A DNA stretch of 63,276 nt, the filler included, from Reticulomyxa filosa (taxonomy: Eukaryota > Protista > Foraminifera), in the NCBI GenBank assembly GCA_000512085.1. It is 17 parts of 17 records of this genome, joined end to end, with 100 filler letters (N's around TTAATTAATTAA, not from the genome) between each part and the next. Parts side by side here need not be neighbours in the genome. Positions count along the whole stretch, not along the records: positions 15,053 to 22,381 come from ASPP01003120.1; 16 more parts are not named here. The stretch is one strand, 5' to 3'. The translations under genes were made by a program, and so were the position numbers. Under the pieces are notes generated by a model, which was not told where the DNA came from, did no database searches, and saw only the letters and a program-made list of their open reading frames with translations. Of this stretch, positions 14,901 to 22,569 are shown in pieces (the first letter of the stretch is position 1; each line of letters begins with the position of its first letter).

Positions 14901-15744
14901 ACTTTTTTTGTTTGTTTATTTTTCACTTTTTTTTTTTTTTTTTTTTTTTTTTNNNNNNNNNNNNNNNNNNNNNNNNNNNNNNNNNNNNNNNNNNNNTTAA
15001 TTAATTAANNNNNNNNNNNNNNNNNNNNNNNNNNNNNNNNNNNNNNNNNNNNTTGTCCATTGTTGCTAGCTTCTTTTGTAGTGTTAAAAAAAAGCAGCAG
15101 TAAAGCTGAAACAAATAAAACAACATCTACCTTACCATGATTACAGTTTTTGAGAAGTTTGAACCTTCCCAACAACAGCATAAGTTTTGCAAACTCGTTT
15201 AGCTAAAAAAAGATAATGATTTCTTTTTTTTTTTTTTTATTTGTCCACAATTGATTTAGTCTTTTCCAACAGTTGCTAATTGTTAACACAATCTCTAATG
15301 ATAAAGTCAAAACACAAAATTATAGATCTTCATATTTCATATAATTTTTTAATGATGTATTGACACGACGATATTGTCACAATACAACTCTAATCATCAT
15401 CATCAAATTAAATCAGCAACTAAGATCCCTAAATGATGTCAGATGTGACAACAATGCGGCCTTTCTTTTTTCATTTTTTTTTAAAGAAATTAATAAAATA
15501 TATTGCAGATGAAGTAAATAATTATTTGCGGAACTAAATGAAGATGTAATTCTACCATATTTGAAATGGAAGAGTTAATTCAACATCACATTTAACACTT
15601 TTAGATTTCTATCTAACAACATAATCAACTATTATTCAAGAAATTTTGGGAGACATCTATACTGTCAAAGCACTTGCAAATCAACGAAAGCTATGAAGCA
15701 CTTTCGTTGACAAAAAAAGGTTATTAAAAAAAGTGCCAAGATCT

Positions 15745-17181
15745 TCAACTATCGCTATTTTCTTCTTGAGGTTCTTTCAACATGTCAAGATAGTCCTTTT
15801 CCAACAAGCCTAAATTCTCACGTGCTTCGGCGAACTCACCTTCCTCCATGCCTTCGCCGACATACCAATGCACAAATGCACGTTGAGAATACATCAAGTC
15901 GTATTTTTGTGCAATGCGTTTATGAAAGACCCTGACAATACCCGTGTTATTTGCAATCATGACAGCATTTTTGGGAAAGGCTCCAATGTCATCTGACTCC
16001 AAAGTTGCAGCGGGTACGTCATTGAGTCCGATTTTAAATCCGGTAGGACACCATTCCACCAGAGTGACTTTGCTGTGACTTTTCAGCCACTGGACAGCCG
16101 CATTTGCATCTTTGGCTTGCACATCTCCGCGATACGTAAGTGAAATGGCCATATATTTATCTTCAGCAGGATCAAAATCAGTAAATTTGACAAACCAATT
16201 GTGAGGCTTGAAGCAATCATCTGTGATTTTATATACCTCATTGGAGGACGTTTCCAAATCCGTCTTTGCAACAATGGGACTAATTCCAGATGTCATAAAA
16301 TGCAAACGAGGGAATGGCACCAAGTTGGTGAGAAAGTCGGAAATATCTTCCGACAACTCTCCACTGAACCTCAGCGAGGCCGTCATTGAAGATATCACTT
16401 TCGATATCAACCGGTTCAAATTTGTGACATCAGGTTTGATGATATGCAGCTGCTTTTGACAAATGTCATAAATCGCCTCGTTGTCCAATACCAATGACAC
16501 CTGTGTATGTTCGATCAGATAGTGCGTCGCCAATAATGCATTGTATGGCTCCACAACACACGTGGACAGGTTTGGAGATGGATACACTTCAAATCCCAAT
16601 TTGGTCTTTTTGCTACCATAATCAGTGGTCAGGTGCTCCAATAGCAATGAGCCCAATCCGGAGCCTGTACCACCTCCCACACTATGTGCCATTATGAATC
16701 CTATCACATTGTCACAGTGGTCCACCAGCTTCCTTATTCGGTCCAATACTTTGCTCAATATTTGCTTGCCCATCGAACAATATCCTCGTGCAAAATTATT
16801 GGATCCATCTTCTTGTCCGTTTATTAAAAACTCATGGTTAAATATCGCTCCATACTCTCCGTTTTTCACATCGTCGATCACATTGGGCTCCAAATCTATC
16901 TATATATTCGTTGCAAGAGGAGGAGGTGTTTCTTTGTGATTAAAAAAAGGTATATGGAAAGGGACAAAAAAAAAAAAAAAAATATCAACTGCCAAATTCC
17001 TTGGCACAAATTGCCCATTACCAGCCTCCTCGAAAAAAATTTTTAACGAATGGTCACGTTGTTCGTTCTCCTTGCGTTTACCCTTTTTGTCAATCCCATG
17101 CTCACAACAGTATTGTTCCCAAATCGCATTGCCCATTTGAATGCCTGCTTGACCAACTTCTATTGTAATCACCTCTCTCAT
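15745..17181 (-). CDS. TUBA: Divergent alpha-tubulin (retarian alpha2-like); 2 exons (17181-16990, 16899-15745)
   Basis: MREVITIEVGQAGIQMGNAIWEQYCCEHGI, VPRNLA|IDLEP across a 90-nt GT-AG intron, NNFARG, HSVGGGTGSG, VVEPYNA, WCPTGFKIG, RAFVHWYVGEGMEEGEF. Confidence 0.96.
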
Positions 17182-17481
17182 TTTTTTGTGTTCAAATGAT
17201 TTGAATTTTATTAAAGAGTTTTTTTGAATGACCTCGGGATTTTAAACATTCAAATTTTTTCTCGAGCATATTTGACACAACTGTTTCTTTTATTTACTAA
17301 AAAACAGTACAATTGCCGAGGCTTGGTGTAATAGTCATACATTGAGAAAAATTTGCCACGCTGAATCTTTTCAACTGGAAGAATCACGAAATTTCTAAAA
17401 GATTTTGGTTTTGCTCACTGTTACAAAAGGAACCTTTTTATTTCAAAAATTCTTGGTCTCGATAGTATTAAAACCTAAGCA
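17182..17481. promoter_or_regulatory. Putative bidirectional promoter between alpha-tubulin and uL13m
   Basis: Only 300 nt separate the two divergent ATGs (17181 on -, 17482 on +). No specific motifs were identified. Confidence 0.5.
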
Positions 17482-18309
17482 ATGTCCCTGGGCTTTTATT
17501 CAAGACATTATGTCGTTCCTTCTTGGCGTCTCTTTGATGCCACAGGCAAAGTTACAATTTTGTGTTTGTTCCAAGACATTGTACTTTTGCGCGGCAGCTC
17601 GTATTGTGCTTATGCATAGAGCGTAGGGAAGCTAGCAAGTGGGCTTTCGCGTTACATTCAAGGAAAACACAAGCCAAATTATGATCCAACAATGATAAAT
17701 GGAGATTTTTGCGTCGTAGTAAATGCAAGATATCTGCAATTCCGAGGAGAAAATAAATGGTATGACAAGCGATATTTTTATCATAGTAGATATCCAGGAG
17801 GATTGAAGATCACGCAAGCGTGGAAGATGATGCAAAAAGACCCTTGCTATGTATTGCGAAGGGCAGTATATGGGATGTTACCAAAAAACAAGAAACGTCA
17901 ATACAACATGAATTTTTTAAAAATCTATCCAGGACCTTATCATCCTCATCAGCACCAATTTAAATCAATTGATCATTTAAAACGTGAAAATGAAAAATTA
18001 CCACGATTGACAGAAAAAGATAAAAAGTCAATTCCTAATTATATTATCAAAGATCGCAAATTTTTGCGACATCGATTTCGTCCGTTTGTGGATGTCACTA
18101 ACAACACCACCGACTCTCAAAAAGCCCTTGCAGGTAGCACTTCTGATCCAAACGTTAAACAACCTAAAGTTGTGCAAAAAACCACTGAGTATGATGATGC
18201 TTTTCGATTCTCACCAAGGAGACCTCATACAATTGATGTCATGAGAAAACAACAGCATTTGCTTCGAGATGCTGCTAAAAAAAGGGAAGAACTTGATAAG
18301 ACTGCTTAA
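17482..18309 (+). CDS. MRPL13: Mitochondrial (bacterial-type) ribosomal protein uL13; 2 exons (17482-17550, 17620-18309)
   Basis: WRLFDATGK|SVGKLASGLSRYIQGKHKPNYDP...GDFCVVVNA...YHSRYPGGLK...LRRAVYGMLPKN...LKIYPGPYHPH, plus a C-terminal extension. Confidence 0.93.
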
Positions 18310-19087
18310 TTTTCTTTTTTTTTCCATCGCACATTCTCGCACTTTCTTTTATTTGCTGAATTATTTCAAATGAATGGGCAACTCTAATCTTTTTGTTTCT
18401 TTTCTTTCCTCGTAGTGGATTGTATAAAAACGAAAAGACTTCTTTTCAAATACTCTTGATTAAAATGTTGGCAATAGTTTTTACTACGATTTAATCGAAA
18501 TAAATCAGAGATTTACACCCTTTTTACAATATTGCTTCTGGGAGGATACCGCTATAAAAAAAAAATTATTTGGAAAAAAATAATTCGTTGTGCTAGACTA
18601 TTAAAAGTGAAAACAAAATAATAAGTGTTGTGCATGTTCCAAAAACTATAAATTATTGCTATGTATATAAAATACGTATTTTTGATTAAATTTTTGCATT
18701 TATATGTGCATTATTAAGAATATAATGTCAACAAATGAAACCAGAGTATAAAATTTATAATAATTCGCATTAACGTTATTTTATTGTTTTTATTAGCGTG
18801 TTTTGAATTGTATATTTAACATTTCATTTTATTACAATCATAAAACAAATTTAGTATAATTCGTTCATGTTCTGTTTTTGTCAAAAGCAAAGTTGATTAG
18901 ATATTCGCTCTTACTCTAGCACTAGTGTGTACTTGTTATGTTTTTTGGAGACTTTATAGTTCAAAATTTCGAGTTTAATCACACAAATCGCTACCACTTT
19001 ATGATATAAACAAAGTAAATAAATCAAAGCGTGTTTTTCTGTTGGCCTGAAAAAGGGAAAACGTGGGACTAAACAAAGAACAGCGCT

Positions 19088-22000
19088 ATGGCCTTGACAA
19101 CCAAAGATTTTGAAGTGGGGGATTATGTTCAATTGATAAAAGACAATCGTCGTGGTTATGTCCGTTTCATTGGAAGAATTCAATCCATAGGTTTCAATTA
19201 TTGTCTTTTTTTTGCCTAGCTTTTATTTGATCATTTGAAGCATTTCCTTATCAAATGAATACAGGCAAAGTTTGCATCGGCGTAGAATGCGACAAAGAAA
19301 TACCAAACGGCCACGATGGTACCTTCAAGGGAACAAAATACTTTACCTGTCCACCAGGCAAAGGAATATTTCTCGTCCCTGACAAAATTCGTTCCATTGT
19401 GAAAAGAGTTGATTATTGACCAACATTGCATGAATATGTGTAATATATTCATTGTGAACACAACAATTTTTTTTTTGCATATTTGCACGCGAACATATTG
19501 GTAATGTGGGAATACAAACAAATAAAAATAAAAAATTATATATGTACATACATATATGCATATACATATACATACATATATATGTATACGTATATAAGAA
19601 AGCATCACCATCTCGCGGACGAGCAAGTCAGAGCGAACAAGCAAAATCTCCAAGTCAAAGCACGACAAGAAGCGGATCAACCCGAGTGCAAAGAGGGACT
19701 GCGAGCGGAGCCAAGGACGGGTCTAGAACAGCTACCTCCGTGCCACGCAAGCCAGTCGGAACGGCGAGCAAAACGAGTGACAAGAGCAAGCCGTTTGAGA
19801 TTCCAAAGGACATGACCACACCAAAGCAAATGATCGATTACATGCTGGGCTTATTGCCAGACAAAAGCACATCGGACAAACAACGTCTCCAAATCTTTGA
19901 TAAGTTCTCCCAACTCATTACATCCACTGATTCACCATTGTCTATTGAAGACGCTCAATATGCCATCACTCAATTCAAAACCCCTATGCCTACACTAGTT
20001 TTAGTTTTTTTTTTTTTTTTTTTTTGAGATCTAAGTATTATTGAATCCTTTTTTAATGTGCAGTTAAAAATGGCAAGCTCAGAAACACACGAAAAAGTAT
20101 TTGGACTAATCGTCGCAATGGCGAAACATCACTCGAATGAATTCAACACATATGCCATCTTTTACATTAAAAAGTTGATGAGCCATTTGACCGACAAACA
20201 CATTCAGTCCGTCTCTTCTTGCGAAAATGCCATTTTTCTCATTATCAACACCAGTGTCGATCATAGTTTTGTTCGTGTTGTCAATGACTTGTGTGTTGAA
20301 GAAAAATGGGTGTAGAAACGTATACATACATATATATATACATATACATATATATATACATATACATATATATATAAATTAAATGTATATGTGATATGCG
20401 ATAGAAAAATTAGTGGCAGCATTTGTGGGAACAGTTCAAGACAAGTCCCCAATAGTGAAAAAGCACTCATTCATGTTTTTGAAAACAATGCTGACGACGG
20501 TGCTTGGAAAGACTGGCCATGATGGCAGTGTAGTCATATCCAAAGAAAATGAAGATGTCAAAAAGGACGAAACAAAGAGTGACTCGACAGCAAATGCCAA
20601 TGGCAACAGCAATAACAATAACAATAACAATAACAATAACAATAACAATAACAATAACAATAAAACAGTAGTGGACAAAGAGATATTAGACTTGACCACC
20701 GAGGCATTGAAGCTTGGCTTGCAAGACAAAGACAAAGCAGTTCGAACCGAGGCAATGGAATGTGTGAATGTATTCAGCAGGTTCGACGAGAGTCGATCCG
20801 AGGCACTGGTTGCGAATATGCCTGTCCAATTCAAAAAGACCTACCACCAAAAATATGGTGGTAATTCCAACACCTCACCACTCGCGCAAGATGCGCAAAC
20901 TACCTCTTCTTCGCCAAAGACCGACAAACAAAAGCCCGTGCCAAATGTCAGAGCAAAGCCGACAACTACGACCACTACGACCACTGCTGCCAAAGATTCT
21001 CGCTCTGCAAGTGTTGGTGCTCCAAACTCTCGCACTACAAGTGCAACGAAATCGATGACATTATCAGATCGAAAACCAACGTCCAAAACCACTATCGTAT
21101 CTCCCAAATCCAAATCTAATCCTAATTCCAATTCCAATTCCAATTCCAATTCCAATTCCAATTCCAATTCCAATTCCAATTCCAATGGGTCTGCCAACCA
21201 AAAAACACCTCCAAAAACAAAAGACAAAGACACTCCCGCTAAGACGCTTCATCGCACCACGTCCTCGACCAATATCAAAACAACGCCCAAAGGTAAATGT
21301 CTTCTTCTTTTGATTGGCTCCTTACATCATGTGTGTGTGTGCATAATATGTTATATGTGCAAACCATACATAGGTCGCACAAATAGTGAGATCGGGAAAA
21401 CCAATGCAAATGGCAAAAAACCTGGCGAAGTGACAAAAGATCAAGGCAAAGGGGTCTCTGCAAAAGCAAATGGACAAGATGCAAAGGGGGATGACTCAAA
21501 GGCCACTGCAAAGACAACGACGGCAAAGGGCCAAAGTGAAAATGCGAATGAAAAAGGAAAGGGAAAAGAACAGTCCAACGGAAATAACACGGCGGTGCCA
21601 CTAAATGTGGCAATCATGGCCATCACCAACGCAAAGGACAACAACGAACCCGATGACGAAGAAGAGGAACCGGCCACTACCAAAACAAAAAAAGAAGCAG
21701 AAACACTTTGAGCTTGGGTGGAGGCATTGATTCTCAAAACTTTATGTCACAACTCTTGGACATGCCTGAAATGTATAATATATACACATATACATATATA
21801 TATATATATTTATTTATTATATTGTGCATTGTGTGTTGCGTATTTATCATTTTGTCAACTTTTTTGGCTTTTATTGCTTTTGGGTCAATATCTTGATCTT
21901 AATCGCTTTTTTTTTTTTTGAATAAAATAAAAGAAAAAATATGAATTAAAAAAAAAACAGAAAGGATAAGGCACCAACGGATACACCGACGGATGCAAGG

Positions 22001-22349
22001 GAAGATGAGAAGAAAGAGCCAACTCACGAAAGCGATGACGAGGACAAAGACAAAACGAGCAACGGCAGCACGCAAGAAAAAGATGCGTTGGCAAATGCAA
22101 ATGGCGATACAACGGATAAACACATCATTGTGGACAGCGTAGATAATGAAACCGGAAATGAAACCGAAACGGAGACAGAAGTGGAAACGACACCACAACC
22201 CGGCGAAACGAGCAGCAACAAAGACGAAAATGCAGATATGGATACAAACGGGACGGACGAAGAAAGAGCTCAATTGATTGAGTCCTTTTTAGAACTGAAA
22301 GAACCACAACTCAATTGGAAAATGGTCGAATTCTTTGCGAAAACCAGTT
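19088..22349 (+). CDS. CAP-Gly + CLASP-type TOG (HEAT) domain protein with long low-complexity tail; multi-exon, 3' end lost in gap
   Basis: Exons 19088-19190 and 19265-19407 give a CAP-Gly domain (VGDYVQL...GYVRFIG...IGVECD...GHDGTFKGTKYFTCPPGKGIFL). Later exons give SCENAIFLIINT..KKLVAAFVGTVQDKSPIVKKHSFMFL...LTTEALKLGLQDKDKAVRTEAMEC, which resembles CLASP TOG2/CLASP_N. S/T/K-rich and acidic regions follow. Confidence 0.8.
21123..21186 (+). repeat. (AATTCC)n coding microsatellite (Asn-Ser repeat)
   Basis: About 10 tandem copies. A second (AACAAT)n poly-Asn tract lies at ~20611-20661. Confidence 0.9.
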
Positions 22350-22569
22350 GAGATGTATGCTTTTACTACTTTTTTTTTTTTNNNNNNNNNNNNNNNNNNN
22401 NNNNNNNNNNNNNNNNNNNNNNNNNTTAATTAATTAANNNNNNNNNNNNNNNNNNNNNNNNNNNNNNNNNNNNNNNNNNNNGTATACGTATACAAAATAT
22501 GTATGTATATTTTATTATTATTATTTGTACATATATCTTCCCTTTTTTTTTTCGGGGGGGGGGGGGGGG

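What the first reader, a model, noticed from the sequence alone, without database searches (positions are those of the whole stretch)
16330..16365. Alpha-tubulin with a natural E254D + N249S change in the GTPase-activating T7 loop/H8
Seen: this gene reads SLRFSGELSEDISDFLTNLVP where canonical alpha-tubulin has [21 protein letters not shown]. The near-invariant E254 is Asp (GAC, 16338-16336), and the GxxNxD synergy-loop Asn is Ser. The rest of the ORF is intact, including GGGTGSG. Established: alpha-E254 completes the beta-tubulin GTPase site across the inter-dimer interface, and engineered E254D slows hydrolysis and lengthens the GTP cap. Inference: this may be a naturally slow-hydrolysis isotype that tunes microtubule dynamics, which would be relevant to foraminiferan reticulopodia and their helical tubulin filaments.
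Basis: partly seen in the sequence, partly recalled or inferred. Interest (0 to 1): 0.8.

Follow-up and report, generated by a model that had tools for sequence, protein, structure and literature searches.

The report
Conserved alpha-tubulin subfamily with Asp at E254
This is an intact alpha-tubulin gene of the foraminiferan Reticulomyxa filosa whose GTPase-activating glutamate (E254) is an aspartate; the change is shared, with two neighbouring changes and a short tail, by a small selectively maintained subfamily, so it probably makes a specialised tubulin, although its effect on GTP hydrolysis is untested.

Summary
On the minus strand (exons 17181-16990 and 16899-15745, with a 90-nt GT-AG intron) lies a 448-aa alpha-tubulin identical to Reticulomyxa filosa RFI_03287. 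Aligned to solved alpha-tubulins, it reads S at 245, S at 249, E at 250, D at 254 (GAC, 16338-16336) and L at 256.

It is not a one-off or an error. N249S/A + E254D + Q256L is fixed in seven proteins: two R. filosa paralogues and five mRNA-like environmental contigs. They form a supported clade (SH-aLRT 99) even with the motif columns removed. In 137 other relatives, N249 is kept in 100%, E254 in 98% and Q256 in 99%.

Synonymous sites are saturated while pN is 0.13-0.16, and dN/dS inside the clade is about 0.13. Asp is encoded by GAC here and GAT elsewhere. The clade also has unusually short C-terminal tails. A second, separate lineage acquired E254D + Q256P (AU test p 5e-59).

The family is the retarian alpha2-tubulin of Krabberød 2017, where T7/H8 was called variable; I found no mention of this subfamily. 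The other catalytic-site residues R2, D251 and K352 are kept.

Slower GTP hydrolysis is plausible by analogy with engineered human E254D, which hydrolyses about four times slower, but it is unproven. FtsZ uses Asp at this position natively.

The parts
16990..17181 (-). Exon 1 of the alpha-tubulin gene (64 codons, MREVITIEVGQAG...PRNLA)
   Evidence: Translation. Pfam Tubulin match at E 9.8e-13. Joined with exon 2 it equals RFI_03287 / P0001.
16900..16989 (-). Intron of 90 nt, GT...AG, phase 0, T-rich
   Evidence: Read directly from the sequence (GCA|GTTGAT...ATATATAG|ATAGAT). Removing it restores ...NLA-IDLEP... and the 448-aa database protein. The environmental mRNA-like contigs L003 and L005 are continuous across this site.
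15745..16899 (-). Exon 2 (384 codons plus TGA stop). It holds most of the GTPase domain, T7/H8, the C-terminal domain and a short tail ...LDMLKEPQEENSDS.
   Evidence: Pfam Tubulin 2.2e-39 and Tubulin_C 4.4e-30. All of the best 60 PDB matches are alpha-tubulin chains.
16315..16374 (-). T7 loop / helix H8 segment LRFSGELSEDISDFLTNLVP (canonical residues 242-261)
   Evidence: Alignment; codons; coordinates.
16336..16338 (-). Asp codon GAC at the position of the catalytic alpha-E254
   Evidence: Asp is present in 7 of 7 clade members, encoded GAT in four environmental cDNAs and GAC here.
16351..16353 (-). Ser codon TCG at the position of T7-loop N249 (the GxxNxD Asn)
   Evidence: The clade has S or A, while all 137 other relatives have N.
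16330..16332 (-). Leu codon CTC at the position of H8 Q256
   Evidence: L is present in 7 of 7 clade members, and Q in 135 of 137 others; the two exceptions are the other E254D lineage, which has P.
16657..16677 (-). G-box GGGTGSG (T4 loop), intact
16795..16809 (-). T3-loop region DGSNN. A99G and A100S are changes private to this copy.
   Evidence: relatives have DAANN in 135-136 of 137.
15748..15789 (-). Short C-terminal tail of 14 residues after ...EKDY, with 5 acidic residues and no terminal Tyr
   Evidence: clade tails are 6-14 residues, against a median of 19 (9 acidic) in 181 relatives, of which only 2 have 12 or fewer.

Best explanation
RFI_03287 is a functional member of a small subfamily of the retarian alpha2-tubulins. 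The subfamily is selectively maintained and is defined by a remodelled GTPase-activating surface (N249S/A, E254D, Q256L) and a truncated C-terminal tail. This part is shown. The mechanism is inferred as follows. When this alpha subunit docks on the beta subunit of the dimer below, its T7 loop and H8 still present both carboxylates, D251 and residue 254, together with R2 and K352. However, the catalytic carboxylate sits on a side chain one methylene shorter, and the neighbouring Asn and Gln amides are gone. The attacking water would then be positioned less well, and polymerisation-triggered GTP hydrolysis would be attenuated but not abolished. Lattices or lattice patches containing this isotype would keep a GTP-like state longer, nucleate more easily and undergo fewer catastrophes. 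The missing acidic tail would also change how motors, MAPs and tail-modifying enzymes read those microtubules. R. filosa keeps at least six copies with E254 and could dose this isotype to tune stability.
For: Identity and integrity.
Signature: it is fixed in 7 proteins, comprising two R. filosa paralogues (P0001, P0011) and the JGI proteins P0003, P0004, P0006, P0068 and P0123.
Clade support: SH-aLRT 98 with the motif columns and 99 without them.
Selection: pS is 0.77-0.87 (saturated) against pN 0.13-0.16 for RFI_03287. dN/dS is 0.10-0.15 where it can be measured inside the clade. Asp codons are synonymous, GAC versus GAT.
Expression of relatives: the environmental members are intron-less contigs of 1.3-1.6 kb, two of them ending in A-runs, so they look like expressed mRNAs.
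Catalytic site: R2, D251 and K352 are conserved, as are the N-site residues. The QM/MM paper PMC10319017 names R2, D251, E254 and K352 as the alpha side of the site.
Precedent: human E254D hydrolyses about four times slower, has a longer EB cap, few catastrophes and more nucleation (PMC7018511).
Convergence: E254D arose a second time together with a Q256 change, here Q256P, in a separate lineage (AU p 5e-59).
Tails: short in the whole clade.
Against: No biochemical, structural or expression data exist for this protein, and no sequencing run was listed. Asp is the native and essential catalytic residue at this position in FtsZ (PMC2171859), so a shorter carboxylate can be fully active if the interface geometry fits. 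The partner beta2-tubulin of Foraminifera is itself highly divergent, at about 45% identity to bovine beta (PMC4990898). The co-fixed N249S and Q256L changes could be compensatory. V250E, private to this copy, adds another carboxylate next to D251, with unknown effect. Foraminiferal microtubules are known for very fast turnover, which does not obviously call for a stabilising isotype.
Confidence: 0.45

Rival explanations
1. This is a compensated active site. In the divergent alpha2/beta2 inter-dimer interface, Asp reaches the catalytic water as it does in FtsZ, helped by the smaller residue at 249 and Leu at 256. Hydrolysis is then normal, or even faster, and the subfamily is specialised for something else, for example tail-dependent interactions.
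For: FtsZ uses a completely conserved Asp (D212) at the equivalent position (PMC2171859). The three changes are always inherited together, and both independent E254D lineages also replaced Q256. This is what coupled, compensating substitutions look like. The truncated tail is an independent specialisation.
Against: In the only tubulin tested, E254D alone clearly slows hydrolysis. N249 is invariant in all 137 other relatives, and losing its amide is more easily read as loss of a contact than as a gain.
Confidence: 0.3
2. This is a tubulin for a non-dynamic or non-microtubule polymer, or a capping/nucleating subunit. Examples are helical filaments, paracrystalline stores and stable bundles. GTPase activation would then be under relaxed or altered constraint rather than tuned.
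For: Krabberød 2017 report T7/H8 and the lateral contacts as generally less conserved in alpha2. Neighbouring positions 245, 250, 252 and 253 vary within the clade. Another R. filosa copy, P0005, has Gly at 254. Apicomplexan alpha3 isotypes that lost D251 and E254 are proposed to build stable polymers (PMC10056924).
Against: Residue 254 is not free to drift. It is Asp in all 7 clade members across saturated synonymous divergence, and the other catalytic-site and polymerisation residues are kept. No localisation data exist.
Confidence: 0.15
3. This is an artefact or a dead gene: a sequencing or assembly error at the codon, or an unexpressed decaying duplicate among the many R. filosa tubulin copies.
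For: The assembly is fragmented (this contig is 7.3 kb) and holds about 25 alpha2 copies. No reads or RNA runs could be examined. This copy has private changes (A99G, A100S, V250E) and a terminal branch of 0.26.
Against: The ORF is complete at 448 codons with canonical splice sites. Synonymous sites are saturated while pN is only 0.13-0.16. The same three-residue signature is present in a second paralogue and in five environmental sequences, so one miscalled base cannot explain it.
Confidence: 0.04

Closest known systems
Retarian alpha2-tubulin (Krabberød et al. 2017, Mol Biol Evol, PMC5455982)
   Same: It is a divergent alpha-tubulin paralogue family found only in Foraminifera and Radiolaria, with about 25 copies in R. 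filosa, and its T7 loop and H8 are reported as less conserved than in canonical alpha1. RFI_03287 groups with Nonionella, Globobulimina and Astrolonche sequences, apart from metazoan alpha.
   Different: The paper describes region-level variability. The passages I read do not describe a subfamily with a fixed N249S/A-E254D-Q256L signature and short tails. Most alpha2 sequences sampled here keep N249, E254 and Q256.
Engineered human TUBA1B E254D (Roostalu et al. 2020, eLife, PMC7018511)
   Same: It carries the same residue change at the same catalytic position.
   Different: It is a single laboratory substitution in a canonical alpha paired with TUBB3. Here the change is natural and ancient, is accompanied by N249S and Q256L (and V250E in this copy), and sits in a 60%-identical alpha2 background with a divergent beta partner.
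Apicomplexan alpha3-tubulin isotypes lacking D251/E254 (Morrissette et al. 2023, PMC10056924)
   Same: They are natural alpha isotypes with an altered GTPase-activating motif, proposed to slow or abolish hydrolysis and to stabilise polymers.
   Different: Those proteins replace both acidic residues (T and H/Q) and have very long tails. This subfamily keeps D251, keeps a carboxylate at 254 and has a very short tail.
FtsZ T7 synergy loop (NxDxxD; E. coli D212)
   Same: An Asp occupies the position equivalent to alpha-E254 and is essential for hydrolysis (PMC2171859).
   Different: FtsZ keeps the T7 Asn, which this subfamily has lost, and it is a homopolymer with a different interface. The similarity concerns one residue and is not evidence of relatedness beyond the superfamily.

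Membership tests
alpha-tubulin | Tubulin/FtsZ GTPase domain plus Tubulin C-terminal domain | tested here: met
   PF00091 matches at 2.2e-39 (exon 2) and 9.8e-13 (exon 1); PF03953 matches at 4.4e-30.
alpha-tubulin | Closer to alpha than to beta, gamma or other tubulins | tested here: met
   All 60 listed PDB matches are alpha chains, the best at E 2.5e-136. The alpha-type motifs FVHWYVGEGMEEGEF and WCPTGFK are present.
alpha-tubulin | G-box GGGTGSG and N-site nucleotide contacts | tested here: met
   GGGTGSG lies at 16677-16657. Q11, D69, E71, D98, N101, S140, T145, T179, E183, N206 and N228 are conserved. The exceptions are Y224V (shared by the whole Reticulomyxa-like group) and the private changes A99G and A100S.
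alpha-tubulin | Alpha-specific S9-S10 insertion (about residues 361-368) | tested here: met
   The alignment to 6u0h_A is ungapped through ...GLNDVPAATLESDDIGAF....
alpha-tubulin | Catalytic Glu at 254 (called 'completely conserved' in PMC2171859) | tested here: not met
   The residue is Asp, codon GAC at 16338-16336. D251, R2 and K352 are met.
alpha-tubulin | T7 GxxNxD Asn (N249) | tested here: not met
   The residue is Ser, codon TCG at 16353-16351.
alpha-tubulin | Long acidic C-terminal tail, usually ending in Tyr or Phe | tested here: not met
   The tail is LDMLKEPQEENSDS: 14 residues, 5 acidic, ending in Ser.
retarian alpha2-tubulin | Groups with foraminiferan and radiolarian alpha sequences, separated from canonical alpha | tested here: met
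   A 50-row clade is separated from the two metazoan alpha outgroups by a 100* branch. It contains named sequences from Nonionella stella, Globobulimina turgida and Astrolonche serrata. The outgroup was limited to two metazoan alphas, and no retarian alpha1 or cercozoan sequences were included.
retarian alpha2-tubulin | Paired in vivo with the divergent beta2-tubulin | not testable with these tools
   No partner data are available, and Krabberød 2017 leave the pairing open.
GAP-deficient alpha isotypes (apicomplexan alpha3 type) | Loss of both D251 and E254 carboxylates | tested here: not met
   D251 is kept and residue 254 is still acidic.

The most novel reading that the evidence does not exclude
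Retaria have twice evolved natural alpha-tubulin isotypes with a shortened catalytic residue (E254D), each time also replacing Q256. In the Reticulomyxa lineage N249 and the acidic tail were lost as well. These isotypes would act as built-in hydrolysis-rate modulators that set GTP-cap length, nucleation and lattice state in reticulopodial microtubules. That would make them a natural counterpart of the laboratory E254D mutant and a genetic handle on how foraminifera control their unusually fast tubulin polymer transitions.
Probability: 0.35. Interest if true: 0.8.

Novelty: new variant of a known kind. Interest (0 to 1): 0.55.

Why it matters
Alpha-E254 is treated as invariant and is the residue that couples polymerisation to GTP hydrolysis. 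All current knowledge of what happens when it is shortened comes from engineered human or yeast tubulin. A naturally fixed E254D that is under selection, has co-evolved neighbours and arose twice would do three things. It would show that evolution uses this position to tune microtubule dynamics. It would point to residues 249 and 256 as functional partners of the catalytic carboxylate. And it would give a concrete, expressible candidate for asking how foraminifera regulate their very rapid microtubule and helical-filament transitions. If hydrolysis turns out to be normal, the subfamily instead shows how the tubulin active site can be rebuilt around an FtsZ-like Asp.

Tried and rejected
- **Raw reads and RNA:** The look-up of sequencing runs on the gene listed no run. 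The codon and the expression of this exact locus remain unverified by reads.
- **dN/dS for RFI_03287:** pS exceeds the Jukes-Cantor limit against every relative. Only pN/pS bounds and within-clade ratios could be given, and no branch-site test was attempted.
- **Single origin of all E254D sequences:** rejected by the AU test (p 5e-59). The caveat is that the group was named after seeing the tree.
- **Pseudogene or error reading:** rejected on the intact ORF, the saturation pattern and the shared signature.
- **K352 apparently lost:** this was my own misreading of the alignment. The column check shows CPTGFK conserved.
- **Literature:** four searches found no description of E254D in retarian tubulins. 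The library omits much of the subscription literature, so this is not proof of novelty.
- **Structure and complex prediction:** not run.
- **Spliced model:** it was searched exon by exon, by reference. For full-length work I used P0001, the database protein returned. The two exons were concatenated only inside scripts, to check identity with P0001 and to count codons.
- **JGI samples:** the nature of samples 3300030740, 3300030741, 3300030614 and 3300030628 could not be looked up.

Full report
**Gene and observation**

The piece 15053-22381 is a 7329-base contig. Its minus strand carries a two-exon gene.
- Exon 1 is 17181-16990 (64 codons).
- The intron is 90 nt, T-rich, with GT and AG ends, at 16989-16900.
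- Exon 2 is 16899-15745 (384 codons plus TGA).

The product is 448 aa and is identical to the database protein 'hypothetical protein RFI_03287 [Reticulomyxa filosa]', also named 'Tubulin alpha chain' in UniRef (P0001; identity checked). Pfam finds the Tubulin and Tubulin_C domains. All 60 listed PDB matches are alpha-tubulin chains, the best at E 2.5e-136.

The printed alignment puts 'lrfsgelsedisdfltnlvp' against '[20 protein letters not shown]'. In canonical numbering the gene therefore has D245S, A247E, N249S, V250E, T253S, E254D and Q256L. Ser-249 is TCG at 16353-16351, and Leu-256 is CTC at 16332-16330. GGGTGSG is intact at 16677-16657.

**Not an isolated oddity**

I scanned the T7/H8 motif in the 120 best full-length hits. 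I then scanned the 120 best hits of a search scored on residues 222-272 alone, which ranks proteins by similarity in this very segment. Among 192 proteins, 181 have the canonical N249/D251/E254/Q256.

Seven share S or A at 249, D at 254 and L at 256:
- RFI_03287;
- a second R. filosa gene on another contig (P0011, ASPP01024095);
- five JGI proteins (P0003, P0004, P0006, P0068, P0123) that are 73-79% identical to RFI_03287.

The JGI members sit on contigs of 1.0-1.6 kb with uninterrupted reading frames. These frames run straight across the site where both R. filosa genes have an intron, and two contigs end in A-runs. They look like transcripts of related organisms, which is indirect evidence that this kind of tubulin is expressed.

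**Phylogeny**

A maximum-likelihood tree of 52 sequences, built with the 20 motif columns removed, still recovers the seven as a clade (SH-aLRT 99). That clade lies inside an 18-sequence group (100) holding all the R. filosa copies. The tree that included the motif columns gave 98.

The wider 50-sequence family contains named sequences from the foraminifera Nonionella stella and Globobulimina turgida and from the acantharean Astrolonche serrata. A long, fully supported branch separates it from the metazoan alpha-tubulins. This matches the retarian 'alpha2-tubulin' of Krabberød et al. 2017. They counted 25 alpha2 copies in R. filosa and noted that the T7 loop and H8 are less conserved in alpha2 than in alpha1 (PMC5455982).

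**Selection**

Against every relative, RFI_03287 differs at 77-87% of synonymous sites, which is saturation. It differs at only 13-16% of non-synonymous sites. Where dS can still be measured inside the clade, dN/dS is 0.10-0.15; for P0006 against P0068, dS is 0.52 and dN is 0.066.

Asp-254 is GAC here and GAT in four environmental sequences, so the amino acid has been held while the codon drifted. An intact 448-codon frame after that much divergence excludes a decaying pseudogene. The shared signature excludes a miscalled base.

**What defines the subfamily**

I looked for columns where the clade never carries the residue that at least 90% of 137 other relatives carry. There are only ten: 109, 128, 133, 158, 165, 224, 249, 254, 256 and 343. 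Three of them lie within eight residues of T7/H8. They are the most conserved elsewhere, with N249 at 100%, E254 at 98% and Q256 at 99%.

Within the clade these three are fixed, while neighbouring positions 245, 250, 252 and 253 vary. The other residues on the alpha side of the catalytic site are conserved, namely R2, D251 and K352 (the set named in PMC10319017). So are the N-site contacts, except Y224, which is V, F, L or T throughout the Reticulomyxa-like group. RFI_03287 has private changes A99G, A100S and V250E.

A second clade feature is the tail. After ...EKDY the clade has 6-14 residues. The median in 181 relatives is 19 residues with 9 acidic, and only two relatives have 12 or fewer. 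The second R. filosa paralogue also ends shortly (...EYLDVLKEPSD*) if its doubtful last annotated intron is not spliced.

**Convergence**

Three further environmental proteins (P0139, P0144, P0150) have E254D with Q256P but keep N249 and a normal acidic tail. They sit elsewhere in the tree, beside sequences that group with Astrolonche. Forcing all E254D sequences into one clade costs 146 log-likelihood units (AU p 5e-59; the group was defined after seeing the tree).

E254D therefore arose at least twice in alpha2-tubulins. Both times Q256 changed too, and those are the only departures from Q256 in the sample. With only two events this is suggestive coupling, not a statistical proof.

**Mechanism**

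The following is established. Alpha-E254, with D251, completes the beta E-site of the dimer below and triggers hydrolysis. In recombinant human tubulin, E254D slows hydrolysis about four-fold, lengthens the EB-binding cap, nearly abolishes catastrophes and raises nucleation (PMC7018511).

The following is inferred. This subfamily keeps the carboxylate but shortens it and removes two neighbouring amides. The most likely outcome is attenuated GTPase activation, giving a stabilising or cap-extending isotype. Its short tail would also change recognition by motors, MAPs and tail-modifying enzymes. I put this at about 0.45.

The main rival, at about 0.3, is compensation. FtsZ uses an essential Asp at this position (PMC2171859), the beta partner in forams is very divergent, and the three changes travel together. 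A role in a non-dynamic polymer (about 0.15) and an artefact or dead gene (about 0.04) are less likely.

**Comparison with what is known**

The gene is already annotated, and its family (alpha2) is published, including the remark that T7/H8 is variable. Within the papers I could search, I did not find a subfamily with a fixed catalytic-residue substitution, co-fixed N249 and Q256 changes and truncated tails, nor the recurrence of E254D.

The nearest natural parallel is the apicomplexan alpha3 isotype, which has lost both D251 and E254 and is proposed to have slow or no GAP activity (PMC10056924). That is a more drastic change and a different one. I therefore rate this a new variant of a known kind. 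It is of moderate to good interest, because E254 is described as completely conserved and because the hypothesis can be tested directly with recombinant tubulin.

**Limits**

- No sequencing run was listed for this locus, so neither the base call nor expression of this exact gene was verified.
- The spliced model was searched exon by exon, by reference.
- The outgroup for the alpha2 assignment was limited to metazoan sequences.
- The trees are 'quick' searches with SH-aLRT support only.

Noticed in passing
L007:4053-5413 (R. filosa contig ASPP01009711; protein P0005): Another R. filosa alpha2-tubulin copy reads ...NVDLSGLQTNLIP, that is E254G plus F255L. It has no carboxylate at the catalytic position, a more drastic change than E254D. 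Its annotated model also skips the PRNLAV residues at the exon junction.
   Followed up: partly
Proteins P0139, P0144, P0150 (JGI; no window coordinates): This is a second, independent E254D lineage with Q256P. N249 and a normal acidic tail are kept. It lies near acantharean-like alpha2 sequences, and the AU test rejects a common origin with the Reticulomyxa clade.
   Followed up: partly
L004:2312-2431 (R. filosa contig ASPP01024095; protein P0011): The annotated last intron and exon of the second E254D paralogue look spurious, because the model's C-terminus is hydrophobic junk. Read without splicing, the frame ends ...EYLDVLKEPSD*, a short tail like that of RFI_03287.
   Followed up: partly
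window 17692-18309 (+), probably with upstream exons around 17500-17690: A ribosomal protein L13-domain gene (PF00572, E 2.4e-23) lies head-to-head with the tubulin gene. The sequence upstream of the listed ORF continues the L13 motif (...SVGKLASGLSRYIQGKHKPNYDP) after an apparent GT-AG intron.
   Followed up: partly
window 19506-21711 (+): A string of ORFs is rich in Asn, Ser-Asn and Thr runs. The piece at 20413-21708 gives a sub-threshold CLASP_N / HEAT-type match (E 8.6e-5, 22.6 bits against a cut-off of 27). This may be a TOG/HEAT-repeat protein next to the tubulin gene. The evidence is weak.
   Followed up: partly
window 16441-16443 (-), canonical residue 224: In canonical alpha-tubulin, Y224 stacks on the guanine of the N-site GTP (from my own knowledge of the family, not tested here). 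It is Val here and V, F, L or T in the whole Reticulomyxa-like alpha2 group, but Tyr in 131 of 137 other relatives.
   Followed up: no
window 19230-19700 and 20330-20400, 21780-21830: AT-rich (TA/CA)n-like microsatellite tracts, translating as YIYIYV... in several frames, flank the genes. These are typical low-complexity intergenic or intronic sequence.
   Followed up: no
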